Assembly: GCA_965655095.1 (NCBI GenBank) | Contig: OZ296648.1 | Coordinates: 123,070,001-123,134,000, forward strand | Reading direction: 5' to 3' | Source of the DNA: Haplodiscus bocki | Lineage: Eukaryota | Length of the DNA: 64,000 bases | In this document: positions 1,943 to 52,859 of the stretch, one piece after another | Layout of the letters: each line of letters starts with the position of its first letter | Numbering within the stretch: the stretch's first letter is position 1 | The notes under the pieces: generated by a model | What the model was told of the DNA's origin: nothing | What the model saw: the letters and a program-made list of their open reading frames with translations, nothing else | The model's database searches: none | Translations under genes and position numbers: made by a program

Positions 1943-1980
1943 AATAGTTTTTAATTTTTCCAATAGTTTTTAATTTTTCC
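1943..1980. repeat. 19-bp tandem duplication
   Basis: AATAGTTTTTAATTTTTCC x2. Confidence 0.85.
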
Positions 1981-2197: not shown

Positions 2198-2415
2198 GGC
2201 AATTTCTGCAATCTCGGCAATTTATGCAATCTTGGGAATCTCGGCACTCTTGCATTTCTGCCTTTTTTTGGCATTTTTAATATTTTCGGCTTTTTGGCCA
2301 CTCTGGCCATTTTGGCCTTCCTGGCCACTCTCGCCATTCAGGCCAATCTGGCTTGTCTGTCATTCTGGCCATTTTAGCCATACTGGCCATTTTGGCAATT
2401 TTAGCCGTTTTGGCT
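2198..2415. repeat. Degenerate 9-bp-period minisatellite (consensus ~GGCCATTTT/GGCAATTTT)
   Basis: Successive units such as ggccactct ggccatttt ggccttcct ggccactct cgccattca ggccaatct ... agccatact ggccatttt ggcaatttt agccgtttt. Confidence 0.8.
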
Positions 2416-4112
2416 AAAAATTTCACGCGAGCCAACATCGTTTTTACGCGAGCTCAATTGGCAAACATCGGGTAAAAGAACGCACCTATGAGAAAGATTT
2501 TGCTTTCATATTCTTAAGAACATGGTGCAAAATAACAAACTATGAAACAACCAACCTATGGACACTTTATGTGGACTTCTTCTCAGCCTTTGTTAAAGTC
2601 TACTAGCACTAAAGCAGAAAAAATCTAAATCAGCGTAAAGTTCAAGACGTAGTCAAACGCGAGCAGAGATGAAGCGGAAATTCGAAACACAATGCACATT
2701 CTCAAACACAACCTTTTAGGACGCTAATATTCATTTTCCCGACCGATGTTTCAAAAATAAGCACTTCTTTTCAAATATCGAGATTAAGCAAATACCTGCC
2801 ACATATCTTAACAATAGGCTCCCTGGCGGAGATCGACCATCGAAGCGATTTAACTACAAGATCACCGATTTCTTTACATCAATTTTCAACGGCCAGCAAA
2901 ACAGCTCCATAAAAGATCAATAAGTTCAACCAACGCCAAAAAAATACAGTCATGATATTTTGCTTAACATGAAAGTTCTCCGAAAAAAAATGATAGCCTT
3001 GCGTCTACAGAAAATACGACAACGGTAACAGAAGTTTTTCATGATATCCCTTTGCTCACGCCGCAAAACCTGAAGCTCCCAGTGATCTTCCCGATAGTCC
3101 TCCAAAATATCATTGACGGTATGCAGAACATAGTATTTTCTTTAAACATATGAAATTATAATACCCCTACTTAAATACTTGAATTTCAGGTCTTGATTTT
3201 TTTTTGTATTTTGGGAATAGAAGACTACTTTGCCTGAGCGGAAAGAGCTTCATATGCTTGTGTCACAATCCTTTTGCTAAGTTGAAGCCGAACCTTTCAA
3301 TAATTGATATATTACTCCTCTGAGCTGGTTGATAAAAGCTCAGCTTTCTTGAACCCTAAACAATTGGAACAAAACACAAATCTGAAACTTCACAATTTTG
3401 ACATTCATAGCAGATCACCGAGTGGTCGTTCATCCAAATGTCTCAAGTCGACAATTCCATGACCGATAATTGGAAGCGCTGACTTTCATACAATAAAACT
3501 CAACAAACTTGACATTTACAGGGGATAATCGATTGGTGGACTGCGATATTGCGGTAGTAAGCTTTTCTTCGGATATTTTCATTTTCAATAATCTACTTTC
3601 TGTTACCGTCAAAGAAAGTTGAGTTCTTGAATTTGGGAGAAGATACGACTTTCAATTTATTGCGTTGGGTTCGATAGATGATTTAGAAAGTTTCGCCGAA
3701 AATAGTTTTTCTATTTTGACCTGTCTTTGAGAAAAAGGCAGTTTTTATTATGGTTATAATTGAGATCTTCAGAGATTTGATATGACAAAACTGGTCAAAC
3801 TGGTCAAAACGCAACATGTTAGAGACGGTTAATCAAGAGTGCTGAAATTTCGAAATTTTTAGATTTGGCGTTCATGGCCGCTGAACAGAAGCCACGAAAA
3901 AAAACACTGCTCACTAATACAAACGAGGAGTTTTGTAACATTGTAACAAAAAATACCGGAAAAATCGATTGCAAAGGAAGGAAAAACATCGTCAAAACAA
4001 TGTACAGAACACGCCAATGCCCATGAGAACACATAAACCACAAAATGCCAATAATTTACAGGGTGGATCGCGAAATCCGAAAAAAACGTACTCTAGTTTT
4101 GTGTCCAAAATT

Positions 4113-5925
4113 TAAAAAAACCATTTTTTCAGCCAAAACTATGTGAAAACGAGTTGCCTCTTCACCTGTAGCACCGTTATTCTGAAAGAAGAGTGGGGTG
4201 AAGCTAGCGTTTTCAATTTCACATTCACGTTCATTGTATTGGGTCTTTTCAATTGTTTCGTTTTGTTTCAGGATTGTTTTCTAGGTATTATTCACGTGAC
4301 TAAGACAGTTTGGGTGGGTTACTCAGACATCAAAAAGATTTCCGCAGAAGTCGCCAGAAACTCCGACATGATAAATCGAGCATCGCATTTTCATCTGAAT
4401 TAGCTGTGCGAGAGAGAATATTTGAGTTTAAAGGTATCAGAGCCGGTTCAATTTCGACTTCTTTGCATACAATCGATAGTAAGTCCGCTTCAAGATCTCG
4501 TATCGCGTTATGTCCGGGGATTACAAATCCTCAAAGTTGATATGTCATTGCGTGATCATTGCTGTTTTCCTTCCTGCATTCACATAGGCGAGGCATATCC
4601 TTAATACCCGACCCATATGTCAAATGTATTGCATCTTCGAACAATACTCTGTTGGAGTCCATTCCTTGTTGTTTGGATGGTAATGATGTCAACCATGTTG
4701 ATATTCCTTTTGCTTGCAATAGTTCTATGTGCCTCTGCATTTTATCGTCAGTTTTTCCCCAGTACTTCCTAGTAGGACATTTTGTGGTTGATTGCAGTAT
4801 ATTTCTTCAATATCCCGTCAGGATCAGATTGAAAAGCTTCCCCAGATATTATCGCTTCCTTTACTTCTTCAGTTAGAAAATCGGGAGAGCGGAATTGTTG
4901 TCGGCATTGGTGAGACGGATATGAAGTCACGGGTTCTTCATACCGAAGAGGTAGGGCAGTAGTATCTCTCCGTATCAGAAACGTTTTGGTGTCCGATGAT
5001 AACTTCCACGAAGCTACGAAAATCTTCTTCTAAGGGTTTCATCAAATCACTCACATTGTCAAGGGTTCTCTGGAAATAGTTCCAACTGTTCTAGAGAATT
5101 CGATTGTACGCTATGTGGCAGAGATAGGGCTCGGATCGCGCTGCTTTTGATAATGCGCAAACTTGATTTCTCTAGGTTTTGATTTTGTCATCTGCGAACA
5201 TCCTGCAATATTCTATTTCACCTAAAACGGCTCCCAAAATTTTCCGTGCGGTTTGAATGATGTTCATTCCGGTGTTTTGGAAAAATCTGTTAGCTTCAGC
5301 TTTTATTTCTTCAGATTCGCAGATCAGCCAACATTTATATGCCTTGGGAAAGTAACCATACTTTGGGTCAAAGCCGTTTATCTGGTCCCACCATTTTTTT
5401 AACTCTCAAAATTTCACCCAGGCACGCAGCGTCATCCGCAAACCATTCCTATACTATAGTCTCTGCTTCGAGTCTTTCCATTAACGCATTCATACCCATA
5501 GCGTAATAGGCCATTGCAATGTTGTCCCCTTGTGTAGTGCCTTCTTGCAATTCAAGTTCCAAGCCTTTCCACGTGAACAGGCGTGCTGCTTCCTGGTACG
5601 TGATCATTAGATAGCAATGGACTTTGGGACAGATGAATTGAGCGTTGTGTAGGGATCTTTCTCGGCTCATGCTATTGAAAGCGTTGGATGTGTCTGTCTG
5701 AAGCATGCATTCCGTTGAAGGTAAACCATAGATTTTTTGCAGCCTCGTGGATAGCAGCTTCAATGCCACCTTCTTGTCCACCGCAGGTTTGTCGGACGCC
5801 AACTTCTTCGAACACATCCGCCTTCAGAAGCTTCGAAAAAGTTTTACCGATGACTCTTCGTAGAACTTCTTCTATGCCAATCGGTCTGACAGCACTTAGC
5901 CCACCCTTGTCCAAACCAATAGTTC
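4113..5925 (-). pseudogene. CRE-clade RT + restriction-like endonuclease fragment in array unit 1 (representative of all 18 units)
   Basis: Frameshifted fragments across copies: DKGGLSAVRPIGIEEVLRRVIGK, QTCGGQEGGIEAAIH, QTDTSNAFNSMSR, EGTTQGDNIAMAYYA, (Q)EWFADDAACLG, YGYFPKAYKCWLI, KHLGAVVG, KGISTWLTSLP, CECRKENSNDHAMT, VEIEPAL, LDLSCRSFW, ENASFTPLFF..NGATGEEATRFH..LAEK. These match metazoan CRE RT, Zn-knuckle and RLE motifs. Confidence 0.9.
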
Positions 5926-6032
5926 TGCATGCTTTCCTCCACTAAGGCTTTCTGTTACAGTGCATGACACCCCTTTAACTGGATTTCAAATATTAGGACG
6001 CACACATGTAATCTATTTCAGTCAGGTACCAG
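5926..6032. other. ~107-bp inter-unit linker, present between all adjacent units but not at either array end
   Basis: TGCATGCTTTCCTCCACTAAGG...CTATTTCAGTCAGGTACCAG follows CCAATAGTTC in units 1-17. The donor copy instead continues GACAGGCGGTG (51136) and unit 1 is preceded by CAATTGGAAC. Confidence 0.85.
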
Positions 6033-9000
6033 AAAACACAAATCTGAAACTTCACAATTTTGACATTCATAGCAGATCACCGAGTGGTCGTTCATCCACA
6101 TGTCTCAAGTCGACAATTCCATGACCGATAAATGGAAGCGCTGACTTTCATACAATAAAACTCAACAAACTTGACATTTACAGCGGATAATCGATTGGTC
6201 GACTGCGATATTGCGGTAGTAAGCTTTTCTTCGGATATTTTCATTTTCAATAATCTACTTTCTGTTACCGTCAAAGAAAGTTGAGTTCTTGAATTTGGGA
6301 AAAGATACGACTTTCAATTTATTGCGTTGGGTTCGTTAGATAATTTAGAAAGTTTCGCCGATAATAGTTTTTCTATTTTGATCCGTCTTTGAGAAAAAGG
6401 CACTTTTTATTATGGTTATAATTGAGATCTTCAGAGATTTGATATGACAAAACTGGTCAAATTGGTCAAAATGCAACATGTTAGAGACGGTTAATCAACA
6501 GTGCTGAAATTTAGAACTCTTTAGATTTGGCGTTCATGGCCGTTAAACAAAAGCCACGGAAAAAAACACTTCTCACTAATACAAACGAGGAGTTTTGTAA
6601 CATTGTAACAAAAAAACAGGAAAAAATCGATTGCAAAGGAAGGAAAAACATCGTTAAGACAATGTACAGAACACGCCAATGCCCATGAGAACACAAAAAC
6701 CACAAAATGCCAGTAATTTACCTGGTGGATCGCGATATCCGTAAAAAAACAAACGAAATTTCTGTGTCCAAAATTTAAAAAAAAATCAATTTTCAGCCAA
6801 AACTATGTGAAAACGAGTTGCCTCTTCACCTGTAGCACCGTTATTCTGAAAGAAGAGTGGGGTGAAGCTAGCGTTTTCAATTTCACATTCACCTTCATTG
6901 TATTGGGTCTTTTCAATTGTTTCGTTTCGTTTCAGGATTGTTTTCTGGGTATTATTCACGTGACTGAGACAGTTTGGGTGGGTTACTCAGACATCAAAAG
7001 AGATTTCTGCAGAAGTCGCCAGAAACTCCGGCATGATAAATCGAGCATCGCATTTTCATCTGAATTAGCTGTGCGAGAGAGAATATTTGAGTTTCAAGGT
7101 ATCAGAGCCGGTTCAATTTCGACTTCTTTGCATACAATCGATAGTAAGTCCGCTTCAAGATCTCGTATCGCGTTATGTCCGGGGATTACAAATCCTCAAA
7201 GTTGATATGTCATTGCGTGATCATTGCTGTTTTCCTTCCTGCATTCACATAGGCGAGGCATATCCTTAATACCCGACCCATATGTCAAATGTATTGCATC
7301 TTCGTACAATACTCTGTTGGAGTCCATTCCTTGTTGTTTGGATGGTAATGATGTCAACCATGTTCAGATTCCTAGTTCTATGTGCCTCTGCAGTTTATCG
7401 TCAGTTTTTCCTGGTACTTCCTCGAAGGACACTTTGTGGTTGATTGCAGTAAATTTCTTCAATATCCCGTCAGGATCAGTTTGAAGAGCTTCTCCAGATA
7501 TGATCGCTTCCTTTACTTCTTCAGTTAGAAAATCGGGAGAGCGGAATTGTTCTCGGCATTGGTGAGACGGATATGGAGTCACGAGTCCTCCATACCGAAG
7601 AGGTAGGGCAGTAATATCTCTCCGTATCAGAAACGTTTTGACGTCCGATGATAACTTCCACGAAGCTACGAAAATCTTCTTCTAAGGGTTTCATCAAATC
7701 ACTCAGATTGTCAAGGGTTCTCTGGAAATAGTTCCAACTGTCCTGGAGAATTCGAGTGTACGCTATGTGGCAGAGATAGGGCTCGGATCGCGCTGCTTTC
7801 GATTATGCGCAAACTTGATTTCTCCAGGTTTTGGTTTTGTCATCTGCGGACATCCTGCAATATTCTATTTCACCTACAACGGCTCCCAAATGTTTCCGTG
7901 CGGTTTGAGTGATGTTCAACCCGGTGTTTTGGAAAAATCTGTTAGCCTCAGTTTTCATTTCTTCAGATTCGCAGATCAGCCAACATTTATATGCCTTGGG
8001 AAAAAAACCATACTTTGCGTCAAAGCCATTTATCTGGTCCCACCATTTTTTAACTCTCAAAAGTTCACCCAGGCACGCAGCGTCATCCGCAAACCATTCC
8101 TGTACTATAGTCTCGGCTTCGAGTCTTTCCATCAACGCATTCATACCGATAGCGTAATAGGCCATTGCAATGTTGTCCCCTTGTGTAGTGCCTTCTTGTA
8201 ATTCAAGTTCCATGCCTTTCCTCGTGAACAGGCGTGCTGCTTCCTGGTACGTGATCATTAGATAGCAATGGACTTTGGGACAGATGAATTGAGCGTTGTG
8301 TAGGGATAATTCTCGGCTCATGCTATTGAAAGCGTTGGATGTGACTATCTGAAGCATGCATTCCGTTGAAGGTAAACCATAGACTTTTTGCAGCCTCGTG
8401 GATAGCAGCTTCAATGCCACCTTCTTGCCCACCGCAGGTTTGTCGGACGCCAACTTATTCGAACACATTCGCTTCCAGAAGCTTCGAAAAAGTTTTACCG
8501 ATGACTCTTCGTAGAACTTCTTCTATGCCAATCGGTCTGACAGCACTTAGCCCACCCTTGTCCAAACCAATAGTTCTGCATGCTTTCCTCCAATAAGGCT
8601 TTCTATAACAGTGCATGACACCCCTGTACCTGGATTCTAAATATTAGGACGCACACATGTAATCTATTTCAGTCAGGTACCAAAAAATACAAATCTGAAA
8701 CTTCATAATTTTGACATTCATGGCAGATCACCGAGTGGTCGTTCATCCACATGTCTCAAGTCGACAATTCCATGACCGATAATTGGGAGCGCTGACTTTC
8801 ATACAATAAAACTCAACAAACTTGACATTCACAGCGGATAATCGATTGGTGGACTGCGATATTGCGGTAGTAAGCTTTTCTTCGGATATTTTCATTTTCA
8901 ATAATCTACTTTCTGTTACCGTCAAAGAAAGTTGAGTTCTTCAATTTGGGAGAAGATACGACTTTCAATTTTTTGCGTTGGGTTCGATAGATGATTTAGA

Positions 9001-12000
9001 AAGTTTCGCCGATAATAATTTTTCTATTTTGATCTATCTTTGAGAAAAAGGCAGTTTTTATTATGGTTATAATTGAGATCTTCAGAGATTTGATATGACA
9101 GAATTGGCCAAACTGGTCAAAATGCATTATGTTAGAGACGGTTAATCAAGAGTGCTGAAAAATAGAACTCTTTAGATTTGGCGTTCATGGCCGCTAAACA
9201 AAAGCCACGGAAAAAAACACTGCTCACTAATACAAACGAGGAGTTTTGTAACATTGTAACAAAAAGTACCGGAAAAAATCGATTGCAAAGGAAGAAAAAA
9301 CATCCTTAAAACAATGTACAGAACACGCCAATGCCCATGAGAACACATAAACCACAAAATGCCAATAATTAACAAGGTGGATCGCGAAATCCGAAAAAAA
9401 CATACTATATTTTTGTGTCCAAAATTTAAAAAAATTCATTTTTTCAGACAAAACTATGTGAAAACGAGTTGCCTCTTCACCTGTAGCGCCGTTATTCTGA
9501 AAGAAGAGCGGGGTGAAGCTGGCGTTTTCAGTGTCACATTCACGTTCATTGTATTGGGTCTTTTCAATTGTTTCGTTTTGTTTCAGGATTGTTTTCTAGG
9601 TATTATTCACGTGACTGAGACAGTTTGGGTGGGTTACTCAGACATCAAAAAGATTTCCGCAGAAGTCGCCAGAAACTCCGACATGATAAATCGAGCATCG
9701 CATTTTCATCTGAATCAGCTGTGCGAGAGAGAATATTTGATTTTAAAGGTATCAGAGCCGGTTCAATTTCGACTCCTTTGCATACAATTGATAGTAAGTC
9801 CGCTTCAAGATCTCGTAACGCGTTATGTCCGGGAATTACAAATCCTCAAAGTTGATATGTCATTGCGTGATCATTGCTGTTTTCCTTCCTGCATTCACAA
9901 AGGCGAGGCATGTCTTTAATACCCGACCCATATGTCAAATGTATTGCATCTTCGAACAATACTCTGTTGGAGTCCGTTCCTTGTTGTTTGGATGGTGATG
10001 ATGTCAACCATGTTGAGATTCCTTTTGCTTGCAATAGTTCTATGTGCCTCTGCATTTTATCGTCAGTTTTTCCTAGTACTTCCTAGTAGGACAATTTGTG
10101 GTTGATTGCAGTATGTTTCTTCAATATCCCGTCAGGATCAGATTGAAAAGCTTCCCCAGATATGATCGCTTCCTTTACTTCTTCAGCTAGAAAATCGGGA
10201 GAGCGGAATTGTTGTCGGCATTGATGAGACGGATATGAAGTCACGAGTCCTCCATACCCAAGAGGTAGGGCAGTAATATCTCTCCGTATCAGAAACGTTT
10301 TGACGTCCGATGACAACTTCCACGAAGCTACGAAAATCTTCTTCTAAGGAATTCATCAAATCACTCACATTGTCAAGGGGTCTCAGGAAATAGTTCCAAC
10401 TGTTCTGGAAAATTCGAGTGTACGCTATATGGCAGAGATAGGGCTCGGATCGCGCTGCTTTAGATAATGCGCAAACTTGATTTCTCCAGGTTTTGATTGT
10501 GTCATCTGCGAACATCCTGCAATATTCTATTTCACTTACAACGGCTCCCAAACGTTTCCGTGCGATTTCAGTGATGTTCATTGCGGTGTTTTGGAAAAAT
10601 CTGTTAGCTTCAGTTTTTATTTCTTCAGATTCGCAGATCAGCCAACATTTATATGCCTTGGGGAAGTAACCATACTTTGGGTCAAAGCCGTTTATCTGGT
10701 CCCACCTTTTTTTAACTCTCAAAATTTCACCCAGGCACGCAGCGTCATCCGCAAACCATTCCTATACTATAGTCTCTGCTTCGAGTCTTTCCATCAACGC
10801 TTTCATACCGATAGCGTAATAGGCCATAGCAATGTTGTCCCCCTGTGTAGTGCCTTCTTGCAATTCAAGTTCCATGCCTTTCCACGTGAACAGGCGTGCT
10901 GCTTCCTGGTACGTGATCATTAGATAGCAATGGACTTTGGGACAGATGAATTGAGCGTTGTGTAGGGATCTTTCCTGGTTCATGCTATTGAAAGCGATGG
11001 ATGTGTCTGTCTGAAGCATGCATTCCGTTGAAGGTAAACCATAGATTTTTTGCAGCCTCGTGGATAGCAGCTTCAATGCCACCTTCTTGTCACCGCAGGT
11101 TTGTCGGACGCCAACTTCTTCGAACACATCCGCCTTCAGAAGCTTCGAAAAAGTTTTACCGATGACTCTTCGTAGAACTTCTTCTATGCCAATCGGTCTG
11201 ACAGCACTTAGCCCACCCTTGTCCAAACCAATAGTTCTGCATGCTTTCCTCCACTAAGGCTTTCTGTTACAGTGCATGACACCCCTGTACCTGGATTTTA
11301 AATATTAGGACGCACACATAAAATCTATTTCAGTCAGGTACCAAAAAACACAAATCTGAAACTTCACAATTTTGACATTCATGGCAGATCACCGAGTGGT
11401 CGTTCATCCACATGTCTCAAGTCGACAATTCCATGACCGATAATTGGAAGCGCTGACTTTCATACAATAAAACTCAACAAACTTGACATTCACAGCGGAT
11501 AATCCATTGGTGGACTGCGACATTGCGGTAGTAAGCTTTTCTTCGGATATTTTCATTTTCAATAATCTACTTTCTGTTACCGTCAAAGAAAGTTGAGTTC
11601 ATGAATTTGGGAAAAGATACGACTTTCAATTTATTGCGTTGGTTCGATAGATGGTTTAGAAAGTTTCGCCGATAATAGTTTTTCTATTTTGATCTGTCTT
11701 TGAGAAAAAGGCAGTTTTTATTATGGTTATAATTGAGATCTTCAGAGATTTGATATGACAAAACTGGCCAAACTGGTCAAAATGCAACATGTTAGAGACG
11801 GTTAATCGAGAGTGCTGAAATTTAGAACTCTTCAGATTTGGCGTTCATGGCCGTTAAACAAAAGCCACGGAAAAAAACATTACTCACTAATACAAACGGG
11901 GAATTTTGTAACATTGTAACAAAAAACAACGGAAAAAATAGATTGCAAAGGAAGCAAAAACATCGTTAAAACAATGTACAGAACACGCCAATGCCCATGA

Positions 12001-15000
12001 GAACACATAAACCACAAAATGCCAATAATTAACGAGGCGGATGGCGAAATACGAAAAAAACATAACAAATTTTTGTGTCCAAAATTAAAAAAAACCATTT
12101 TTTCAGCCAAAACTATGTGAAAACGAGTTGCCTCTTCACCTGTAGCACCGTTATTCTGAAAGAAGAGTGGGGTGAAGCTAGCGTTTTCAATTTCACATTC
12201 ACCTTCATTGTATTGGGTCTTTTCAATTGCTTCGTTTCGTTTCAGGATTGTTTTCTGGGTATTATTCACGTGACTGAGACAGTTTGGGTGGGTTACTCAG
12301 ACATCAAAAGAGATTTCTGCAGAAGTCGCCAGAAACTCCGGCATGATAAATCGAGCATCGCATTTTCATCTGAATTAGCTGTGCGAGAGAGAATATTTGA
12401 GTTTAAAGGTATCAGAGCCGGTTCAATTTCGACTTCTTTGCATACAATCGATAGTAAGTCCGGTTCAAGATCTCGTATCGCGTTATGTCCGGGGATTAAA
12501 AATCCTCAAAGTTGATATGTCATTGCGTGATCATTGCGGTTTTCCTTCCTGCATTCACATAGGCGAGGCATATCCTTAATACCCGACCCATATGTCAAAT
12601 GTATTGCATCTTCGAACAATACTCTGTTGGAGTCCATTCCTTGTTGTTTGGATGGTAATGATGTCAACCATGTTGAGATTCCTTTTGCTTGCAATAGTTC
12701 TATTTGCCTCTGCATCTTATCGTCAGTTTTTCCTAGTACTTCCTAGTAGGACATTTTGTGGTTGATTGCAGTATGTTTCTTCAATATCCCGTCAGGATCA
12801 GATTGAAAAGCTTCCCCAGATATGATCGCTTCCTTTACTTCTTCAGCTAGAAAATCGGGAGAGCGGAATTGTTGTCGGCATTGATGAGACGGATATGAAG
12901 TCACGAGTCCTCCATACCCAAGAGGTAGGGCAGTAATATCTCTCCGTATCAGAAACGTTTTGACGTCCAATGACAACTTCCACGAAGCTACGAAAATCTT
13001 CTTCTAAGGAATTCATCAAATCACTCACATTGTCAAGGGGTCTCAGGAAATAGTTCCAACTGTTCTGGAGAATTCGATTGTACGCTATATGGCAGAGATA
13101 GGGCTCGGATCGCGCTCCTTTTGATAATGCGCAAACTTGATTTCTCCAGGTTTTGATTGTGTCATCTGCGAACATCCTGCAATATTCTATTTCACTTACA
13201 ACGGCTCCCAAACGTTTCCGTGCGATTTCAGTGATGTTCATTGCGGTGTTTTGGAAAAATCTGTTAGCTTCAGTTTTTATTTCTTCAGATTCGCAGATCA
13301 GCCAACATTTATATGCCTTGGGGAAGTAACCATACTTTGGGTCAAAGCCGTTTATCTGGTCCCACCTTTTTTTAACTCTCAAAATTTCACCCAGGCACGC
13401 AGCGTCATCCGCAAACCATTCCTATACTATAGTCTCTGCTTCGAGTCTTTCCATCAACGCTTTCATACCGATAGCGTAATAGGCCATAGCAATGTTGTCC
13501 CCCTGTGTAGTGCCTTCTTGCAATTCAAGTTCCATGCCTTTCCACGTGAACAGGCGTGCTGCTTCCTGGTACGTGATCATTAGATAGCAATGGACTTTGG
13601 GACAGATGAATTGAGCGTTGTGTAGGGATCTTTCCCGGTTCATGCTATTGAAAGCGATGGATGTGTCTGTCTGAAGCATGCATTCCGTTGAAGGTAAACC
13701 ATAGATTTTTTGCAGCCTCGTGGATAGCAGCTTCAATGCCACCTTCTTGTCACCGCAGGTTTGTCGGACGCCAACTTCTTCGAACACATCCGCCTTCAGA
13801 AGCTTCGAAAAAGTTTTACCGATGACTCTTCGTAGAACTTCTTCTATGCCAATCGGTCTGACAGCACTTAGCCCACCCTTGTCCAAACCAATAGTTCTGC
13901 ATGCTTTCCTCCACTAAGGCTTTCTGTTACAGTGCATGACACCCCTGTACCTGGATTTTAAATATTAGGACGCACACATAAAATCTATTTCAGTCAGGTA
14001 CCAAAAAACACAAATCTGAAACTTCACAATTTTGACATTCATGGCAGATCACCGAGTGGTCGTTCATCCACATGTCTCAAGTCGACAATTCCATGACCGA
14101 TAATTGGAAGCGCTGACTTTCATACAATAAAACTCAACAAACTTGACATTCACAGCGGATAATCCATTGGTGGACTGCGACATTGCGGTAGTAAGCTTTT
14201 CTTCGGATATTTTCATTTTCAATAATCTACTTTCTGTTACCGTCAAAGAAAGTTGAGTTCTTGAATTTGGGAAAAGATACGACTTTCAATTTATTGCGTT
14301 GGTTCGATAGATGATTTAGAAAGTTTCGCCGATAATAGTTTTTCTATTTTGATCTGTCTTTGAGAAAAAGGCAGTTTTTATTATGGTTATAATTGAGATC
14401 TTCAGAGATTTGATATGAAAAAACTGGCCAAACTGGTCAAAATGCAACATGTTAGAGACGGTTAATCGAGAGTGCTGAAATTTAGAACTCTTCAGATTTG
14501 GCGTTCATGGCCGTTAAACAAAAGCCACGGAAAAAAACATTGCTCACTATTACAAACGGGGAATTTTGTAACATTGTAACAAAAAACAACGGAAAAAATC
14601 GATTGCAAAGGAAGCAAAAACATCGTTAAAACAATGTACAGAACACGCCAATGCCCATGAGAACACATAAACCACAAAATGCCAATAATTAACAAGGCGG
14701 ATGGCGAAATACGAAAAAAACATACCAAATTTTTGTGTCCAAAATTAAAAAACACCATTTTTTCAGCCAAAACTATGTGAAAACGAGTTGCCTCTTCACC
14801 TGTAGCACCGTTATTCTGAAAGAAGAGTGGGGTGAAGCTAGCGTTTTCAATTTCACATTCACCTTCATTGTATTGGGTCGTTTCAATTGCTTCGTTTCGT
14901 TTCAGGATTGTTTTCTGGGTATTATTCACGTGACTGAGACAGTTTGGGTGGGTTACTCAGACATCAAAAGAGATTTCTGCAGAAGTCGCCAGAAACTCCG

Positions 15001-42000: not shown

Positions 42001-45000
42001 GGACAATTTGTGGTTGATTGCAGTATGTTTCTTCAATATCCCGTCAGGATCCGATTGAAAAGCTTCTCCAGATATCATCGCTTCCTTTACTTCTTCAGTA
42101 AGAAAATCGGGAGAGCGTAATTGTTGTCGGCATTGATGAGACGGATATGAAGTCACGAGTCCTCCATACCCAAAAGGTAGGGCAGTAATATCTCTCCGTA
42201 TCAGAAACGTTTTGACGTTTGATGACAACTTCCACGAAGCTACGAAAATCTTCTTCTAAGGAATTCATCAAATCACTCACATTGTCAAGGGGTCTCAGGA
42301 AATAGTTCCAACTGTTCTGGAGAATTCGAGTGTACGCTACATGGCAGAGATAGGGCTCGGATCGCGCTGCTTTTCATAATGCGCAAACTTGATATCTCCA
42401 GGTTTTGATTTTGTCATCTGCGAACATCCTGCAATATTCTATTTCACCTACAACGGCTCCCAAAAGTTTCCGTGCGGTTTGAATGATGTTCATTCCGGTG
42501 TTTTGGAAAAATCTGTTAGCTTCAGTTTTTATTTCTTCAGATTCGCAGATCAGCCAACATTTATATGCCTTGAGAAAGTAACCATACTTTGGGTCAAAGC
42601 AGTTTATCTGGTCCCACCATTTCTTAACTCTCAAAAGTTCACCCAGGCACGCAGCGTCACCCGCAAACCATTCCTATACTATAGTCTCTGCTTCGAGTCT
42701 TTCCATCAAGGCTTTCATACCGATAGCGTAAGAGGCCATAGCAATATTGTCCCCATGTGTAGTGCCTTCTTGCAAATCAAGTTCCATGCCTTTCCTCGTG
42801 AACAGGCGTGCTGCTTCCTGGTACGTGATCATTAGATCGTAATGGACTTTCGGACAGATGAATTGAGCGTTGTGTAGGGATCTTTCTCGGCTCATGCTAT
42901 TGAAAGCGTTGGATGTGTCTGTCTGAAGCATGCATTCCGTTGAAGGTAAACCATAGATTTTTTGCAGCCTCGTGGATAGCAGCTTCAATGCCACCTTCTT
43001 GTCCACCGCAGGATTGTCGGACGCCAACTTCTTCGAACACATCCGCCTTCAGAAGCTTCGAAAAAGTTTTACCGATTACTCTTCGTAGAACTTCTTCTAT
43101 GCCAATCGGTCAATCAGCACTAAGCCCACCCTTGTCCAAACCAAGTTCTGCAAGCATTCTTCCACTAAGGCTTTCTGTTACAGTGCATGACACCCCTGTA
43201 CCTGGATTTTAAATATTAGGACGCACACATGTAATCTATTTCAGTCAGGTACCAAAAAACACAAATCTGAAACTTCACAATTTTGACATTCATGGCAGAT
43301 CACCGAGTGGTCGTTCATCCATATGTCTCAAGTCGACAATTCCATGACCGAGAATTGGGAGCGCTGACTTTCATACAATAAAAATCAACAAACTTGACAT
43401 TTACAGCGGATAATCGATTGGTGGACTGCGATATTGCGGTAGTAAGCTTTTCTTCGGATATTTTCATTTTCAATAATCTACTTTCTGTTACCGTCAAAGA
43501 AAGTTGAGTTCATGAATTTGAGAAAAGATACGACTTTAAATTTATTGCGTTGTGTTCGATAGATGATTTAGAAAGTTTCGCCGAAATAGTTTTTCTATTT
43601 TGATCTGTCTCTGAGAAAAAGGTAGTTTTTATTATGGTTATAATTGAGATCTTCAGAGATTTGATATGACAAAACTGGTCAAAATGCAACATGTTAGAGA
43701 CGGTTAATCAAGAGTGCTGAAATTTAGAACTCTTCAGATTTGGCGTTCATGGCCGTTAAACAAAAGCGACGGAAAAAAACATTGCTCACTCATACAAACG
43801 AGGAATTTTGTAACATTGTAACAAAAAACAACGGAAAAAATCGATTGCAAAGGAAGCAAAAACATCGTTAAAACAATGTACAGAACACGCCAATGCCCAT
43901 GAGAACACATAAACCACAAAATGCCAATATTTAACAAGGTGGATCGCGAAATCCGAAAAAAACATACTATATTTTTGTGTCCAAAATTAAAAAAAAATCA
44001 TTCTTTCAGCCAAAAACTAAGTGAAAACGAGTTGCCTCTTCACCTGTAGCACCGTTATTCTGAAAGAACAGTGGGATGAAGCTAGCGTTTTCAATTTCAC
44101 ATTCACGTTCAATGTAATGGATCTTTTCAATTGTTTCGTTTTGTTTCAGGATTGTTTTCTGGGTATTATTCACGTGACTGAGACAGTTTGGGTGGGTTAC
44201 TCAGACAGCAAAAGAGATTTCTGCAGAAGTCGCCAGAAACTCCGGCATGATAAATCGAGCATCGCATTTTCATCTGAATCAGCTGTGCGAGAGAGAATAT
44301 TTGATTTTAAAGGTATCAGAGCCGGTTCAATTTCGACTTCTTTGCATACAATCGATAGTAAGTCCGCTTCAAGATCTCGTAACGCGTTATGTCCGGGGAT
44401 TACAAATCCTCAAAGTTGATATGTCATTGCGTGATCATTGCTGTTTTCCTTCCTGCATTCACATAGGCGAGGCATATCTTTAATACCCGACCAATATGTC
44501 AAATGTATTGCATCTTCGAACAATACTCTGTTGAAGTCCATTCCTTGTTGTTTGGATGGTAATGATGTCAACCATGTTGAGATTCCTTTTGCTTGCATGC
44601 TTGCAATAGTTCAATGTGCCTCTGCATTTTATCGTCAGTTTTTCCTAGTACTTCCTAGTAGGACAATTTGTGGTTGATTGCAGTATGTTTCTTCAATATC
44701 CCGTCAGGATCAGATTGAAAAGCTTCTCCAGATATCATCGCTTCCTTTACTTCTTCAGTTAGAAAATCGGGAGAGCGTAATTGTTGTCGGCATTGATGAG
44801 ACGGATATGAAGTCACGAGTCCTCCATACCCAAGAGGTAGGGCAGTAATATCTCTCCGTATAAGAAACGTTTTGACGTCCGATGACAACTTCCACGAAGC
44901 TACGAAAATCTTCTTCTAAGGAATTCATCAAATCACTCACATTGTCAAGGGGTCTCAGGAAATAGTTCCAACTGTTCTGGAGAATTCGAGTGCACGCTAT

Positions 45001-48000
45001 ATGGCAGAGATAGGGCTCGGATCGCGCTGCTTTTCATAATGCGCAATTTTGATATCTCCAGGTTTTGATTTTGTCATCTGCGAACATCCTGCAATATTCT
45101 ATTTCACCTACAACGGCTCCCAAAAGTTTCCGTGCGGTTTGAATGATGTTCATTCCGGTGTTTTGGAAAAATCTGTTAGCTTCAGTTTTTATTTCTTCAG
45201 ATTCGCAGATCAGCCAACATTTATATGCCTTGGGAAAGTAACCATACTTTGGGTCAAAGCAGTTTATCTGGTCCCACCATTTTTTAACTCTCAAAAGTTC
45301 ACCCAGGCACGCAGCGTCATCCGCAAGCCATTCCTAAACTATAGTCTCTGCTTCGAGTCTTCCCATCAAGGCTTTCATACCGATAGCGTAATAGGCCATA
45401 GCAATGTTGTCCCGTTGTGTAGTGCCTTCTTGCAAATCAAGTTCCATGCCTTTCCTCGTGAACAGGCGTGCTGCTTCCTGGTACGTGATCATTAGATCGT
45501 AATGGACTTTGGGACAGATGAATTGAGCGTTGTGTAGGGATCTTTCTCGGCTCATGCTATTGAGAGCGTTGGATGTGTCTGTCTGAAGCAGGCATTCCGT
45601 TGAAGGTAAACCATAGATTTTTTGCAGCCTCGTGGATAGCAGCTTCAATGCCACCTTCTTGTCCACCGCAGGTTTGTCGGACGCCACTTCTTCGAACACA
45701 TCCGCTTTCAGAAGCTTCGAAAATGTTTTACCGATGACTCTTCGTAGAACTTCTTCTATGCCAATCGGTCTGACAGCACTTAGCCCACCCTTGTCCAAAC
45801 CAATAGTTCTGCATGCTTTCCTCCACTAAGGCTTTCTGTTACAGTGCATGACACCCCTGTACCTGGATTTTAAATATTAGGACGCACACATGTAATCTAT
45901 TTCAGTCAGGTACCAAAAAACACAAATCTGAAACTTCACAATTTTGACATTCATGGCAGATCACCGAGTGGTCGTTCATCCATATGTCTCAAGTCGACAA
46001 TTCCATGACCGAGAATTGGGAGCGCTGACTTTCATACAATAAAAATCAACAAACTTGACATTTACAGCGGATAATCGATTGGTGGACTGCGATATTGCGG
46101 TAGTAAGCTTTTCTTCGGATATTTTCATTTTCAATAATCTACTTTCTGTTACCGTCAAAGAAAGTTGAGTTCATGAATTTGAGAAAAGATACGACTTTTA
46201 ATTTATTGCGTTGTGTTCGATAGATGATTTAGAAAGTTTCGCCGAAATAGTTTTTCTATTTTGATCTGTCTCTGAGAAAAAGGTAGTTTTTATTATGGTT
46301 AAAATTGAGATCTTAGAGATTTGATATGACAAAACTGGTCAAAATGCAACATGTTAGAGACGGTTAATCAAGAGTGCTGAAATTTAGAACTCTTCAGATT
46401 TGGCGTTCATGGCCGTTAAACAAAAGCGACGGAAAAAAACATTGCTCACTCATACAAACGAGGAATTTTGTAATATTGTAACAAAAAACAACGGAAAAAA
46501 TCGATTGCAAAGGAAGCAAAAACATCGTTAAAACAATGTACAGAACACGCCAATGCCCATGAGAACACATAAACCACAAAATGCCAATATTTAACAAGGT
46601 GGATCGCGAAATCCGAAAAAAACATACTATATTTTTGTGTCCAAAATTAAAAAAAAATCATTCTTTCAGCCAAAAACTAAGTGAAAACGAGTTGCCTCTT
46701 CACCTGTAGCACCGTTATTCTGAAAGAACAGTGGGATGAAGCTAGCGTTTTCAATTTCACATTCACGTTCAATGTAATGGGTCTTTTCAATTGTTTCGTT
46801 TTGTTTCAGGATTGTTTTCTGGGTATTATTCACGTGACTGAGACAGTTTGGGTGGGTTACTCAGACAGCAAAAGAGATTTCTGCAGAAGTCGCCAGAAAC
46901 TCCGGCATGATAAATCGAGCATCGCATTTTCATCTGAATCAGCTGTGCGAGAGAGAATATTTGATTTTAAAGGTATCAGAGCCGGTTCAATTTCGACTTC
47001 TTTGCATACAATCGATAGTAAGTCCGCTTCAAGATCTCGTAACGCGTTATGTCCGGGGATTACAAATCCTCAAAGTTGATATGTCATTGCGTGATCATTG
47101 CTGTTTTCCTTCCTGCATTCACATAGGCGAGGCATATCTTTAATACCCGACCCATATGTCAAATGTATTGCATCTTCGAACAATACTCTGTTGAAGTCCA
47201 TTCCTTGTTGTTTGGATGGTAATGATGTCAACCATGTTGAGATTCCTTTTGCTTGCATGCTTGCAATAGTTCAATGTGCCTCTGCATTTTATCGTCAGTT
47301 TTTCCTAGTACTTCCTAGTAGGACAATTTGTGGTTGATTGCAGTATGTTTCTTCAATATCCCGTCAGGATCAGATTGAAAAGCTTCTCCAGATATCATCG
47401 CTTCCTTTACTTCTTCAGTTAGAAAATCGGGAGAGCGTAATTGTTGTCGGCATTGATGAGACGGATATGAAGTCACGAGTCCTCCATACCCAAGAGGTAG
47501 GGCAGTAATATCTCTCCGTATCACAAACGTTTTGACGTCCGATGATAACTTCCACGAAGCTACGAAAATCTTCTTCTAAGGGTTTCATCAAATCACTCAG
47601 ATTGTCAAGGGTTCTCTGGAAATAGTTCCAACTGTCCTGGAGAATTCGAGTGTACGCTATGTGGCAGAGATAGGGCTCGGATCGCGCTGCTTTCGATTAT
47701 GCGCAAACTTGATTTCTCCAGGTTTTGGTTTTGTCATCTGCGGACATCCTGCAATATTCTATTTCACCTACAACGGCTCCCAAAAGTTTCCGTGCGGTTT
47801 GAATGATGTTCATTCCGGTGTTTTGGAAAAATCTGTTAGCTTCAGTTTTTATTTCTTCAGATTCGCAGATCAGCCAACATTTATATGCCTTGGGAAAGTA
47901 ACCATACTTTGGGTCAAAGCAGTTTATCTGGTCCCACCATTTCTTAACTCTCAAAAGTTCACCCAGGCACGCAGCGTCATCCGCAAACCATTCCTACACT

Positions 48001-49329
48001 ATAGTCTCTGCTTCGAGTCTTTCCATCAAGGCTTTCATACCGATAGCGTAATAGGCCATAGCAATGTTGTCCCGTTGTGTAGTGCCTTCTTGCAAATCAA
48101 GTTCCATGCCTTTCCTCGTGAACAGGCGTGCTGCTTCCTGGTACGTGATCATTAGATCGTAATAGACTTTGGGACAGATGAATTGAGCGTTGTGTAGGGA
48201 TCTTTCTCGGCTCATGCTATTGAGAGCGTTGGATGTGTCTGTCTGAAGCAGGCATTCCGTTGAAGGTAAACCATAGATTTTTTGCAGCCTCGTGGATAGC
48301 AGCTTCAATGCCACCTTCTTGTCCACCGCAGGTTTGTCGGACGCCACTTCTTCGAACACATCCGCTTTCAGAAGCTTCGAAAATGTTTTACCGATGACTC
48401 TTCGTAGAACTTCTTCCATGCCAATCGGTCTGACAGCACTTAGCCCACCCTTGTCCAAACCAATAGTTCTGCATGCTTTCCTCCACTAAGGCTTTCTGTT
48501 ACAGTGCATGACACCCCTGTACCTGGATTTTAAATATTAGGACGCACACATGTAATCTATTTCAGTCAGGTACTAAAAAACACAAATCTGAAACTTCACA
48601 ATTTTGACATTCATGGCAGATCACCGAGTGGTCGTTCATCCACATGTCTCAAGTCGACAATTCCATGACCGAGAATTGGGAGCGCTGACTTTCATACAAT
48701 AAAAATCAACAAACTTGACATTTACAGCGGATAATCGATTGGTGGACTGCGATATTGCGGTAGTAAGCTTTTCTTCGGGAAATTTTCATTTTCAATAATC
48801 TTCTTTCTGTTACCGTCAAAAAGAGTTGAGTTCATGAATTTGGGAAAAGATACGACTTTCAATTTAATGCGTTGGGTTCGATAGATGATTTAGAAAGTTT
48901 CGCCGATAATAGTTTTTCTATTTTGATCTGTCTTTGAGAAAAAGGCAGTTTTTATTATGGTTATAATTGAGATCTTCAGAGATTTGATATGACAAAACTG
49001 GTCAAACTGGTCAAAATGCAACATGTTAGAGACGGTTAATCGAAATTGCTGAGATTTAGAACTCTATAGATTTGGCGTTCATGGCCGTTAAACAAAAGCC
49101 ACGGAAAAAAACATGGCTCACTAATACAAACGAGGAATTTTGTAACATTGTAACAAAAAACAACGGAAAAAATCGACTGCAAAGGAAGCAAAAACATCGT
49201 TAAAACAATGTACAGAACACGCCAATGCCCATGAGAACACATAAACCACAAAATGCCAATAATTAACAAGGTGGATCGCGAAATCCGAAAAAAACATACT
49301 ATATTTTCGTGTCCAAAAGTTAAAAAAAT

Positions 49330-52205
49330 TCATTTTTTCAGCCAAAACTATCTGAAAACGAGTTGCCTCTTCACCTGTAGCACCGTTATTCTGAAAGAAG
49401 AATGGGGTGAAGCTAGCGTTTTCATTTTCACATTCACGTTCAATGTAATGGGTCTTTTCAATTGTTTCGTTTTGTTTCAGGATTGTTTTCTGGGTATTAT
49501 TCACGTGACTGAGACAGTTTGGGTGGGTTACTCAGACAGCAAAAGAGATTTCTGCAGAAGTCCGCAGAAACTACGGCATGATAATCGAGCATCGCATTTT
49601 CATCTGAATTAGCTGTGCGAGAGAGAATATTTGATTTTAAAGGTATGAGAGCCGGTTCAATTTCGACTTCTTTGCATACAATCGATAGTAAGTCCGCTTC
49701 AAGATCTCGTATCGCGTTATGTCCGGGGATTACAAATCCTCAAAGTTGATATGTCATTGCGTGATCAATGCTGTTTTCCTTCCTGCATTCACATAGGCGA
49801 GGCAGATCTTTAATACCCGACCCATATGTCAAATGTATTGCATCTTCGAACAATACTCTGTTGAAGTCCATTCCTTGTTGTTTGGATGGTAATGATGTCA
49901 ACCATGTTGAGATTCCTTTTGCTTGCATGCTTGCAATAGTTCAATGTGCCTCTGCAATTTGTCGTCGGTTTTTCCTAGTACTTCCTAGTAGGACATTTTG
50001 TGGTTGATTGCAGTATGTTTCTTCAATATCCCGTCAGGATCAGATTGAAAAGCTTCTCCAGATATGATCGCTTCCTTTACTCTTCAGTTAGAAAATCGGG
50101 AGAGCGGAATTGTTGTCGGCATTGGTGAGACAGATATGGAATCACGAGTCCTCCATACCGAAGAGGTAGGGCAGTAATATCTCTCCGTATCAGAAACGTT
50201 TTGACGTCCGATGATAACTTCCACGAAGCCACGAAAATCTTCTTCTACGGGTTTCATCAAATCACTCTTATTGTCAAGGGTTCTCTGGAAATAGTTCCAA
50301 CTGTTCTGGAGAATTCGAGTGTACGCTATGTGGCAGAGAGGGCTCGGATCGCGCTGCTTTTGAAAATGCGCAAACTTGATTTCTCCAGGTTTTGATTTTG
50401 TCATCTGCGAACATCCTGCAATATTCTATTTCACCTACAACGGCTCCCAAAAGTTTCCGTGCGGTTTGAATGATGTTCATTCCGGTGTTTTGGAAAAATC
50501 TGTTAGCTTCAGTTCTTATTTCTTCAGATTCGCAGATCAGCCAACATTTATATGCCTTGGGAAAGTAACCATACTTTGGGTCAAAGCAGTTTATCTGGTC
50601 CCACCATTTCTTACCTCTCAAAAGTTCACCCAGGCACGCAGCGTCATCCGCGAACCATTTCTGTACTATAGTCTCTGCTTCGAGTCTTTCCATCAAGGCT
50701 TTCATACCGATAGCGTAATAGGCCATAGCAATGTTGTCCCCTTGTGTAGTGCCTTATTGCAATTCAAGTTCCATGCCTTTCCTCGTGAACAGGCGTGCTG
50801 CTTCCTGGTACGTGATCATTACATAGCAATGGACTTTGGGACAGATGAATTGAGCGTTGTATAGAGATCTTTCTCGGCTCATGCTATTGAAAGCGTTGGA
50901 TGTCTGTCCGAAGCATGCATTCCGTTGAAGGTAAACTATAGATTTTTTGCCGCCTGGTGGATAGCAGCTTCAATGCCACCTTCTTGTCCACCCCAGGTTT
51001 GTCGGACGCCAACTTCTTCGAACACATTCGCTTTCAGAAGCTTCGAAAATGTTTTACCGATGACTCTTCGTAGAACTTCTTCTGTGCCAATCGGTCTGAC
51101 AGCACTTAGCCCACCCTTGTCCAAACCAATAGTTCGACAGGCGGTGTAAGTCTCAAATGCCACCAGATTGACATTTTCACAACATATTTTTCGGGCAACT
51201 TCGGACACTGTGTTGCAAAACTTTTCACTAACTTGTTTGAAGTTGGTCAAGTAGGCCATTCGTCGAACATTCGGAGCGTCCAGACCACTGGGTCCACTAG
51301 CTCCTCGCGCCTGCAATGCGGCGGTTTAATTCGGAGTGGTCTATGGAATCAAACACAACTGGGTTAAATTCCGCCGGTAATCCCTGAATCATTTCGGATG
51401 TCATTACTTGTCGACGTGGTGGATGCAGTTTGTGGAGTTGTTTCAGCACAATTTCATTTGGCTGTAGGACACCTTTGGAATCTTCCTATTCAATGAGATT
51501 CACTGCTCTTGTCAACCTTCCTTTAAGAACTAATTCGGTAAATTCTTTATTGATACTTGACTTGCGTGTTTTAGATTTGTGCAGCTTTTGTTGGATTGCT
51601 TCACATTCATTAAAAATCAAATCGAATTCTCCATCAATCCACCATTTCAGTCGTTTCTCTAAAAATTTCGAATGATCTTCCGCTTTCGATTTCCTGAAAT
51701 GTTTCTGTAGCATCAACATGCAGTAGACGGAAGATTTTTACTGATTTGTTCTGCAGGTGGGAGATTTTGACAAAGAGTGGGAGAATTCAGTTAGCTTCAG
51801 GAACAAAATGCTTCACTGCATTACCATGGGCTAGATACAAAGTTTTTCTTCAGAAAGACAGCTTTACCGTAAATTTCATCAGTTTTCCGAGAGAATTTTT
51901 CGTCTTTGCTCATCGGGGTGCTCGGCTCCAAGCAAGGTGAGGTAATCGAGAGCACTTGCATGCCCTGGCCTAGGCTACACGAGGCATCATTTTCGTATCT
52001 GGTGTCAATTTTCAGGGCATCCATCCCTGGAGTAAGCCCGGTGTGTGAATCTTTATATTTTTTGGCGTATGAAATCGCTGGTCCAATTCTCCGCCGATGG
52101 AAGTCCACTGCACATGACATGGACATAACCGCATATATGGCTAGAAAGATCTTGATTCTTTTCGAAAGCGCCAATACATGAATTACATTTCATTTGATCG
52201 ACCAT
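49330..52205 (-). pseudogene. CRE ORF2 (PHD-like finger - RT - CCHC - RLE) with multiple frameshifts and stops
   Basis: Starts MVDQMKCNSCIGAFEKNQDLSSHICGYVHVMCSGLPSAENWTSDFIRQK (decayed Cys/His finger). Continues through ORF-track fragments 51821-52174, 51486-51719, 50936-51316, 50274-50726, 49740-49928 and 49121-49504. Confidence 0.8.
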
Positions 52206-52280
52206 TTTATCGTTACTCAAATTCTCGTTTGTGATCTGAGCTGATGAAAGCTACGTAGATCAAAAAAGGCTTACGTTAAA

Positions 52281-52859
52281 TCAGTTGTAAGATGTTTTCT
52301 TCTTTCCTCTCTTTCTGTCATCATTCTCAAGATCCGGATAGTCGTGGATAATAGTTGAAACAAATTGTCGCTCTAGCTGAAGGTTCAGATGAACTTTGCC
52401 GAGTTCAGTTCGTACGATGGGTTCAGTTTTCATACGATGGGATATCAGTTTTTTGTCAACGTCGATAACGTGAAAATCAGTTTCCAGTAACTTGTGGTAT
52501 TTACTCGTAGCTCTGTGGCGCTGACAGTGCAGAATTGCGCGGATACGTGATTTGAAGGAGCGGAGGATAGACCAAAGTTCTCAGGGATCGACAGCTGGGT
52601 ACTCTTTTCTGGGATCGTTTCTTGGATTGAGATGTCGGGATATGGTGTTGTTTATAATGTCGTGCCAAATTATGAGATCAGATTTGGCTCTCAATGGTTG
52701 GTCGCTGTTCAGTAGAGATTGCAATCGCTGTTTCGAATTTGGATGATGTCGGTTGAGCCCAAGCCCTGGAATTGTAGTTAAATTTCCTCTGAGATGGTTG
52801 TTTTCTTTTTCGGCTTCTTCGGCGATTGGTCTAAGACAGCTAGCAGCAATTATATGCAT
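52281..52859 (-). pseudogene. CRE-associated ORF1, 193 codons with one premature stop (52581-52583); SGNH/esterase-like
   Basis: MHIIAASCLR...TIPGLGLN...LIIWHDIINNTI...VDP*ELWSILRSF...IDVDKKL...ELGKVHLNLQLE...KRGKKKTSYN*. Motif order resembles SGNH blocks I (xxxAAS), II (PG), III (IIxHxxxN) and V (xxVHLN). Confidence 0.6.

What the first reader, a model, noticed from the sequence alone, without database searches (positions are those of the whole stretch)
3371..51135. 48-kb macrosatellite built from a dead retrotransposon junction, inside an intron of the ciliary gene IFT46
Seen: 18 copies of ~2.66 kb make up ~89% of the predicted intron. The unit is not a retrotransposon monomer. It spans the element's 3' junction (~730 bp of flank + TSD + RLE/RT portion) and breaks in the middle of RT (at TACR|TIGLDK), and the 5'-complete parent is still attached at the right end. 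This captures a TE-to-satellite transition with the founder in place. Inference: the intron grew from roughly 8 kb to ~54 kb, which could affect IFT46 transcription time, chromatin and copy-number polymorphism.
Basis: partly seen in the sequence, partly recalled or inferred. Interest (0 to 1): 0.75.

Follow-up and report, generated by a model that had tools for sequence, protein, structure and literature searches.

The report
Jumping-gene junction repeated inside IFT46 intron
A 2.66-kb piece of DNA made of a dead jumping gene's end plus its neighbouring DNA has been copied head-to-tail 18 times and now fills 89% of a 53.6-kb intron of the only cilium gene IFT46 in this acoel worm; it is a clean, well-preserved example of a known way that jumping genes seed satellite DNA, not a new kind of system.

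Summary
Window 3371-51135 is a head-to-tail array of 18 copies (units 2649-2665 bp, 0.8-6.1% apart). Each unit holds 730 bp of non-element flank, a 10-13-bp target-site duplication, a short T-run tail and about 1.8 kb of an R2-like (restriction-like endonuclease) non-LTR retrotransposon. Every unit is cut at the same point (TACR|TIGLDK). The 5' part of that element continues once, at 51136-52931, and ends at the second TSD copy.

A 107-bp filler of unknown origin sits at all 17 internal junctions. The element copy also lacks about 430 bp near its 3' end. The break lies at the N-terminal edge of the RT core, not in its middle.

IFT46 exon 1 (54180-54042, minus strand) and exon 2 (469 downwards) have canonical, phase-matched GT/AG sites. 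The intron is therefore 470-54041, and the array fills 89% of it. No RNA of this species was available; transcript-sized contigs from relatives encode the joined form.

K-mer depth in two samples matches the assembled copy number.

Earlier scan notes list many similar arrays in this genome on other DNA. Verdict: a real, ordinary member of a known kind.

The parts
3371..51135 (-). Tandem array of 18 copies of flank plus element fragment (17 with filler, the last without). The element and IFT46 sense strands are both the minus strand.
48577..49308 (.). Non-element flank of the last unit, about 730 bp (first unit: 3371-4100). It holds a ~265-bp dispersed repeat; the same repeat lies at 22145-22409 in unit 8.
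49309..49318 (.). 3' copy of the target-site duplication GTGTCCAAAA. It is 12-13 bp (TGTGTCCAAAATT) in most units and exact in 13 of 18 units.
49319..49329 (-). Short T-run tail of the element (as read on the minus strand), like the T-run at the 3' end of other genomic copies.
49330..51135 (-). Element fragment of the last unit: RT core, linker, CCHC knuckle and most of the RLE. It corresponds to about residues 390-998 of a 1052-aa intact relative.
48470..48576 (.). 107-bp junction filler (one of 17 copies), absent from both outer edges and from the rest of the genome.
51136..52931 (-). Single-copy 5' part of the parent element. It has many frame breaks and begins at 52931 with a spliced-leader-like sequence.
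52933..52945 (.). 5' copy of the target-site duplication (TGTGTCCAAAATT).
54042..54180 (-). IFT46 coding exon 1 (46 codons plus 1 nt; motif NQPYDECVEVPDGEEVASLYTPTPR). An acceptor-like tttttttcag ends at 54197 upstream of it, and the donor GT is at 54041-54040.
470..54041 (-). Predicted IFT46 intron, 53,572 bp, phase 1.
1..469 (-). Start of IFT46 exon 2. It runs on beyond the left end of the window to the stop at genome C1:123069541 and carries the whole PF12317 domain without interruption.

Best explanation
An R2-like (RLE-type) non-LTR retrotransposon inserted in sense orientation into the first coding intron of IFT46. The insertion made a 13-bp target-site duplication, and the copy decayed.

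Later, one non-homologous tandem duplication joined a point at the N-terminal edge of the element's RT core to a point 730 bp outside its 3' end. That join has 107 bp of filler at the new junction. Having two copies then allowed unequal exchange, replication slippage and local gene conversion, which raised the number to 18 and kept the inner units more alike than the edge units.

The result is a locus-specific, non-coding macrosatellite that enlarged the intron from about 8.4 kb to 53.6 kb. The structure and copy number are shown. The order of events and the exchange mechanism are inferred. No function is indicated; the array is most likely tolerated intronic DNA.
For: - One breakpoint, one filler and one flank are shared by all units. 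The filler is present 17 times and absent at both outer edges, as expected if one founding junction was propagated.
- The TSD is at the 3' junction of the units and once at the parent's 5' end.
- The parent's 5' part is single-copy in assembly and in reads.
- Flank and filler are unique to this locus.
- Divergence rises with distance between units (97.8% identity at lag 1, 95.8% at lag 11; Mantel r 0.61, p 1e-4). Edge units are the most diverged.
- Some disabling stops are private to one unit or shared by only 16 of 18, so decay went on after amplification.
- Depth ratios of 8.9-12.4 match the predicted k-mer multiplicity of 11.3-11.6 in samples S1 and S2.
- The gene model rests on PF12317 at 268 bits in one exon, a unique conserved exon 1, and phase-matched GT/AG sites.
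- Transcript-sized contigs of relatives, and the RefSeq isoform X1 of Convolutriloba macropyga, encode exon 1 joined to exon 2.
Against: - No RNA of this species was seen, so splicing across the array is not shown.
- The origin of the filler is unknown. A later deletion of a leftmost filler copy would fit an alternative start point for the duplication.
- The contigs that cross the breaks carry only 30 letters on one side, one short of the reads tool's 31-letter rule. That is what a k=31 graph gives at a repeat edge, but it is borderline.
- All four runs come from one study, and sample S1 may be the assembled sample.
- A burst of amplification followed by local conversion would give the same identity gradient.
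Confidence: 0.85

Rival explanations
1. Single burst. The 2.66-kb segment was excised or copied as a circle (the filler marking the closure), amplified by rolling-circle replication and re-integrated by homology at its source. Later local gene conversion produced the identity gradient.
For: The array starts and ends in register with the source segment, and every internal junction is identical. Earlier scan notes list many 35-90-kb arrays of 1.7-2.7-kb units in this genome, which hints at a common process (unchecked notes).
Against: Distance-dependent divergence and strongly diverged edge units are the direct expectation of stepwise unequal exchange; a burst needs an added conversion step. There is no evidence of circles.
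Confidence: 0.1
2. The array is intronic only on paper. IFT46 mRNA is mostly made from a start downstream of the array, with the spliced leader added at the exon-2 acceptor (window 470/469), giving a protein that starts at the Met of MNRDDD. The polymerase then need not cross the array.
For: C. macropyga RefSeq lists a 304-aa isoform X2 that starts at the homologous internal Met. About 30% of genes are SL trans-spliced in a related acoel (PMC9911081). The exon-2 acceptor is a good polypyrimidine-CAG site.
Against: Exon 1 is intact, unique in the genome and 96% identical in protein to that of a close relative. Its donor matches the phase of exon 2. Transcript-sized contigs of two relatives carry the joined form. 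The two forms could also coexist.
Confidence: 0.15
3. Assembly artefact: a few copies were over-expanded by the assembler.
For: Long near-identical repeats are a classic source of misassembly, and no spanning read was seen here.
Against: All 18 units are distinct (at least 0.8% apart) with an ordered gradient. K-mer depth of locus-specific array contigs is 8.9-12.4 times single-copy depth, matching the 11.3-11.6 predicted from the assembly, in two samples.
Confidence: 0.03
4. Repeated independent insertions of a site-specific RLE element into a pre-existing tandem target (as R2 does in rDNA, or CRE/NeSL in SL gene arrays), or tandem element dimers from double insertion.
For: RLE elements are often site-specific, and double insertion is a documented seed of TE-derived satellites (PMC5932611).
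Against: Every unit has the identical 5' truncation point, the identical 107-bp filler and the same internal 3' deletion. No RNA gene is in the unit. The unit holds 730 bp of non-element DNA that is unique in the genome.
Confidence: 0.01

Closest known systems
TE-derived satellite and macrosatellite DNA (reviewed in PMC9659126; double-insertion model in PMC5932611)
   Same: A mobile-element fragment became the monomer of a tandem array that then grew by unequal exchange.
   Different: The monomer is not element-only. It is a junction piece with 730 bp of unique host flank and a 107-bp filler, so the seed was a segmental tandem duplication rather than a double insertion. The single-copy remainder of the founder is still attached.
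Human macrosatellites with kb-scale units that contain retro-derived sequence, such as D4Z4 (PMC3616921; survey in PMC2588610)
   Same: The unit is kilobase-sized, there are tens of copies, the array is locus-specific, and the unit holds retro-derived sequence.
   Different: There is no intact gene in the unit, no evidence of function or copy-number polymorphism, and the array lies inside an intron of an essential cilium gene.
R2-type (RLE) non-LTR retrotransposons
   Same: Intact relatives have a single ORF with an RT, followed by a CCHC knuckle and a restriction-like endonuclease fold that matches R2 structures. The insertion has a TSD.
   Different: Relatives carry an N-terminal PHD finger. 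The element has a T-run 3' end and a spliced-leader-like 5' end, with no sign of rDNA or SL-gene target specificity.
Other macrosatellites noted by this scan in the same genome (s1-366627: hAT plus ~680 bp of flank, about 32 copies; s1-381270: provirus-host junction with its source beside it)
   Same: The architecture is the same: one mobile-element junction plus neighbouring DNA, amplified into a 40-60-kb array.
   Different: The element classes and loci differ. Those notes were not re-checked here.

Membership tests
Macrosatellite (locus-specific tandem repeat with kb-scale unit) | Head-to-tail copies of a unit of 1 kb or more | tested here: met
   18 copies, 2649-2665 bp each, all in one orientation
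Macrosatellite (locus-specific tandem repeat with kb-scale unit) | Confined to one locus | tested here: met
   Flank plus filler match only C1:123.07-123.12 Mb in the 1.5-Gb genome
Macrosatellite (locus-specific tandem repeat with kb-scale unit) | Copy number varies between individuals | tested here: inconclusive
   Depth ratios are 8.9-12.4 in S1 and 8.2-11.6 in S2. The spread within one sample is as large as the spread between samples.
TE-derived satellite by double insertion (PMC5932611) | Monomer consists of element sequence only, joined 3' end to 5' end at a shared target site | tested here: not met
   The monomer holds 730 bp of unique flank and a 107-bp filler, and the element part is an internal fragment
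RLE-type (R2-like) non-LTR retrotransposon | Reverse transcriptase domain | tested here: met
   RVT_1 at 38-42 bits in intact genomic relatives of 1047-1052 aa. This copy's pieces are 43% identical to them across the start of the RT. The pieces alone give no Pfam hit.
RLE-type (R2-like) non-LTR retrotransposon | C-terminal zinc knuckle plus restriction-like endonuclease fold, downstream of the RT | tested here: met
   The model of the relative's C-terminal 293 aa (pLDDT 84) hits R2 proteins 9nl3, 9dou and 8gh6 at E 1e-5 to 3e-4. The CxC..H..C, RHN and EP motifs are kept in this family.
RLE-type (R2-like) non-LTR retrotransposon | Target-site duplication from target-primed insertion | tested here: met
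   TGTGTCCAAAATT is at both ends of the composite element. I estimate the chance expectation at about 1e-4 or less.
CRE clade (as named in earlier scan notes) | RT phylogeny places it with CRE/SLACS; inserts in SL genes | not tested
   No phylogeny was run, and no SL RNA gene or other RNA gene is at the target
IFT46 gene | IFT46_B_C domain (PF12317) | tested here: met
   268 bits, positions 1-210 of 211, in one open exon; the only match in the genome
IFT46 gene | Conserved N-terminal exon joined to the rest in mRNA | tested here: inconclusive
   The exon is present, intact, unique and phase-compatible. The joined form was seen only in relatives' transcript-sized contigs and in RefSeq models. 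No RNA of this species was available.

The most novel reading that the evidence does not exclude
This array is one visible product of a genome-wide process in this acoel that amplifies 1.7-2.7-kb mobile-element junction segments into 35-90-kb arrays. The scan holds about 95 'macrosatellite' notes for this genome. The process might run through circular intermediates or a replication-restart pathway. In this case it has split the only IFT46 gene, so the cell may rely on spliced-leader addition at exon 2 to make a shorter protein.
Probability: 0.15. Interest if true: 0.6.

Novelty: new member of a known kind. Interest (0 to 1): 0.35.

Why it matters
The locus records the step from a dispersed element to a satellite unusually clearly. 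The founding junction, the filler, the TSD and the unamplified remainder of the founder are all still readable, and divergence between units shows the edge-versus-centre pattern expected from unequal exchange.

It shows that a segmental duplication of an element-host junction can seed a macrosatellite, and not only double insertion.

It also gives a natural test case for how a single-copy, essential cilium gene tolerates an intron about 20 times the mean intron length reported for a related acoel (2.5 kb, PMC9911081), filled with sense-strand repeats.

Taken alone it is descriptive, and the kind is known.

Tried and rejected
- Tandem Repeats Finder found nothing because its longest period is 500. 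K-mer distances and BLAST were used instead.
- Pfam on the ten stop-to-stop pieces of this copy gave no RT hit. Classification had to go through intact relatives.
- Sequence search of PDB with the relative, whole and C-terminal part, gave nothing useful. Only the fold search worked.
- Rfam and tRNA scans found no RNA gene in the unit, which rules out an SL, 5S or tRNA gene array as the target.
- The missing ~430-bp 3' part of the element is nowhere in the window. The filler matches nothing in the window or the genome.
- The sigma-70 promoter scan is meaningless for an animal and is disregarded.
- The sequencing-run search returned only DNA-like Logan contigs from one study, so expression, splicing, and the starts and ends of RNAs could not be tested.
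- The spliced IFT46 model was searched exon by exon only; the joined sequence was never built or searched.
The alignment tools print a consensus line on their own; it was not used.
Full report
**Observation**

The window has no N. The commonest distances between repeated 20-mers are 2649-2665 bp. BLAST of one unit against the window gives an unbroken head-to-tail tiling from 3371 to 51135 at 94-99% identity. Exact junction motifs give 18 unit starts (3371, 6033... 48577) and an end at 51135. There are seventeen units of 2649-2665 bp and a last one of 2559 bp. TRF missed the array only because its period limit is 500.

**Anatomy of the unit**

Genome-wide copies of the element match window 49330 to about 52931 on the minus strand. 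On the plus strand each unit consists of:

- 730 bp of flank.
- The motif GTGTCCAAAA, which is TGTGTCCAAAATT in most units.
- About 11 nt of A-run, which is a T-run on the element's strand.
- About 1.8 kb of element, ending at ...CCAATAGTTC. This is the codon boundary TACR|TIGLDK on the minus strand.
- 107 bp that match neither the left flank of the array, nor the parent element, nor anything else in the window or the genome.

This filler occurs exactly 17 times and is absent at both outer edges. The same TGTGTCCAAAATT lies once more at 52933-52945, two bases beyond the element's 5' end at 52931.

The flank is unique to this locus except for a ~265-bp dispersed repeat inside it. No tRNA or Rfam family lies in the unit.

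**The element**

Other full-length copies (L002-L004, 78-84% identical) share about 430 bp more at the 3' end: about 55 codons plus the UTR, ending in a T-run. This copy lacks that stretch, and it is nowhere in the window. Because the TSD and a T-run tail are in place, the copy was inserted already internally deleted, or from a shortened RNA. It was not cut afterwards.

The composite copy (49330-52931) is broken into at least 15 frame pieces, so 'dead' is right. Some stops are private to one unit or present in 16 of 18, which shows that decay continued after amplification.

Pfam does not see the RT in the pieces. Distant intact relatives in the same genome (33-38% identity, ORFs of 1047-1052 aa) carry RVT_1, and one carries an N-terminal PHD finger. 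This family's CCHC/RHN/EP region aligns to the relative's residues 780-888. An AlphaFold model of the relative's C-terminal 293 residues, built with 36 homologues (pLDDT 84), hits R2 retrotransposon proteins at E 1e-5 to 3e-4 and nothing else convincingly.

The break TACR|TIGLDK maps to residues 389-395 of the relative, about 8 residues before the Pfam RT match starts. The units therefore keep the whole RT core, and the break is at its N-terminal edge rather than in its middle. The 3' end maps to residue ~998 of 1052.

The 5' end resembles the published spliced leader of Symsagittifera roscoffensis (PMC9911081). This agrees with earlier scan notes that LINEs in this acoel start with a retro-copied leader.

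**Host gene**

PF12317 (IFT46_B_C) matches once in the genome, at 268 bits, inside one open 315-aa frame on the minus strand. That frame ends at window 488. Close relatives start at the Met that corresponds to MNRDDD, which at first suggested an intronless gene with the array upstream of it.

However, tblastn of 120 IFT46 homologues finds their conserved N-terminal motif at 54201-54013, minus strand (best E 1e-11). The sequence shows:

- an ATG at 54180;
- 46 codons plus one base;
- a GT donor at 54041-54040;
- a polypyrimidine-CAG acceptor ending at 470, with exon 2 starting at 469;
- phase 1 on both sides.

Exon 1 is unique in the genome. The intron is 470-54041, or 53,572 bp, and the array is 89% of it. 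Without the extra 17 units it would be 8,366 bp.

I did not build or search the joined sequence; the exons were handled separately, by reference. Direct RNA evidence for this species is lacking. A 356-aa protein from 1.3-kb Logan contigs (91% identical to this gene's product), a 349-aa one from a second relative, and RefSeq isoform X1 of Convolutriloba macropyga all carry exon 1 joined to exon 2. That species also has an isoform X2 that starts at the internal Met, so a short form made by an alternative 5' end or SL addition at exon 2 is possible here too. These cluster members also place the organism among convolutid-like acoels.

**Is the copy number real?**

All 18 units differ (0.8-6.1%, mean 3.5%).

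In four runs kept as Logan contigs (samples S1 and S2, one study), contigs over the single-copy parent and intron have k-mer depths of about 12, 27.5, 45 and 60. Locus-specific array contigs have 106-108, 293-326, 403-560 and 491-699, which gives ratios of 8.2-12.4. For the two contigs whose exact sequence could be traced, the assembly predicts a mean 31-mer multiplicity of 11.6 and 11.3. The observed ratios are 9.0 and 11.6 for the first, and 8.9, 11.8 and 12.4 for the second.

A contig from 51106 to 51481 crosses the array-parent break at single-copy depth in X1, X2 and X4. X2 has a 535-nt contig across filler and flank. An assembly expansion is thus very unlikely, though the exact number still needs spanning reads.

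**Dynamics and mechanism**

Identity falls from 97.8% between neighbours to 95.8% at eleven units apart (Mantel r 0.61, p 1e-4). The first two units and the last unit are the most diverged, and units 5-9 are the most alike. There is no higher-order period.

Together with the single shared junction, this fits one founding non-homologous tandem duplication with a filler insertion, followed by unequal exchange and local conversion. Repeated insertion and double insertion (PMC5932611) are excluded by the shared breakpoint, the shared filler and the unique host flank. A rolling-circle burst cannot be excluded, but it needs an extra step to explain the gradient.

Nothing indicates a function.

**Context and verdict**

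TE-to-satellite transitions are well documented (PMC9659126, PMC5932611). Earlier notes of this scan list many similar arrays in this genome on other DNA, including a hAT insertion with ~680 bp of flank copied about 32 times (s1-366627) and a provirus-host junction array with its source beside it (s1-381270). I did not check those notes.

It is a neat specimen of a known kind. Its added value is the preserved founder and its position in the only IFT46 gene. The mean intron length in a related acoel is 2.5 kb (PMC9911081), so this intron is about 20 times that.

Noticed in passing
window 53125-53615: Very high-copy, palindromic MITE-like repeat inside the same intron. K-mer depth is 100-150 times single copy, with many alternative joints in contigs. 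There are weak mir-2797-like hits on both strands at 53413-53502.
   Followed up: partly
window 22145-22409 (and the same place in every unit): A ~265-bp dispersed repeat sits inside the 'unique' flank of the unit. It has about 25 other genomic hits at 69-82% identity, in both orientations.
   Followed up: partly
window 469-488 and P0247/P0248: The C. macropyga RefSeq entry has a 304-aa IFT46 isoform that starts at the Met inside exon 2. Here the exon-2 acceptor could take the spliced leader and give a short form that avoids transcribing the array. The 315-aa database protein P0001 is exon 2 read from a spurious upstream ATG.
   Followed up: partly
window 52902-52931 (minus strand) and L002 5' end: The element's 5' ends resemble the published S. 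roscoffensis spliced leader GCCTAATTGTTGTGATAAACTTATTAAATAGA, as earlier scan notes proposed.
   Followed up: partly
window 55075-58869 (+ strand): A second, unrelated LINE with an RT ORF (57847-58869) lies upstream of IFT46 exon 1. A leader-like sequence near 55250 translates to ...YCCDKLIKKF, like the one at 52931.
   Followed up: no
genome-wide (scan notes): About 95 notes mention macrosatellites in this genome, often units of mobile-element or virus fragments with the source beside them. This suggests that kb-unit arrays are unusually common in this acoel.
   Followed up: no
L030 (G000:C10:90174500-90183500) and L031: Intact 1047-1052-aa ORFs of a related RLE-type family (PHD, RT, CCHC/RLE), possibly still active. 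Hundreds of unnamed homologues at ~50% identity are in public assemblies.
   Followed up: partly
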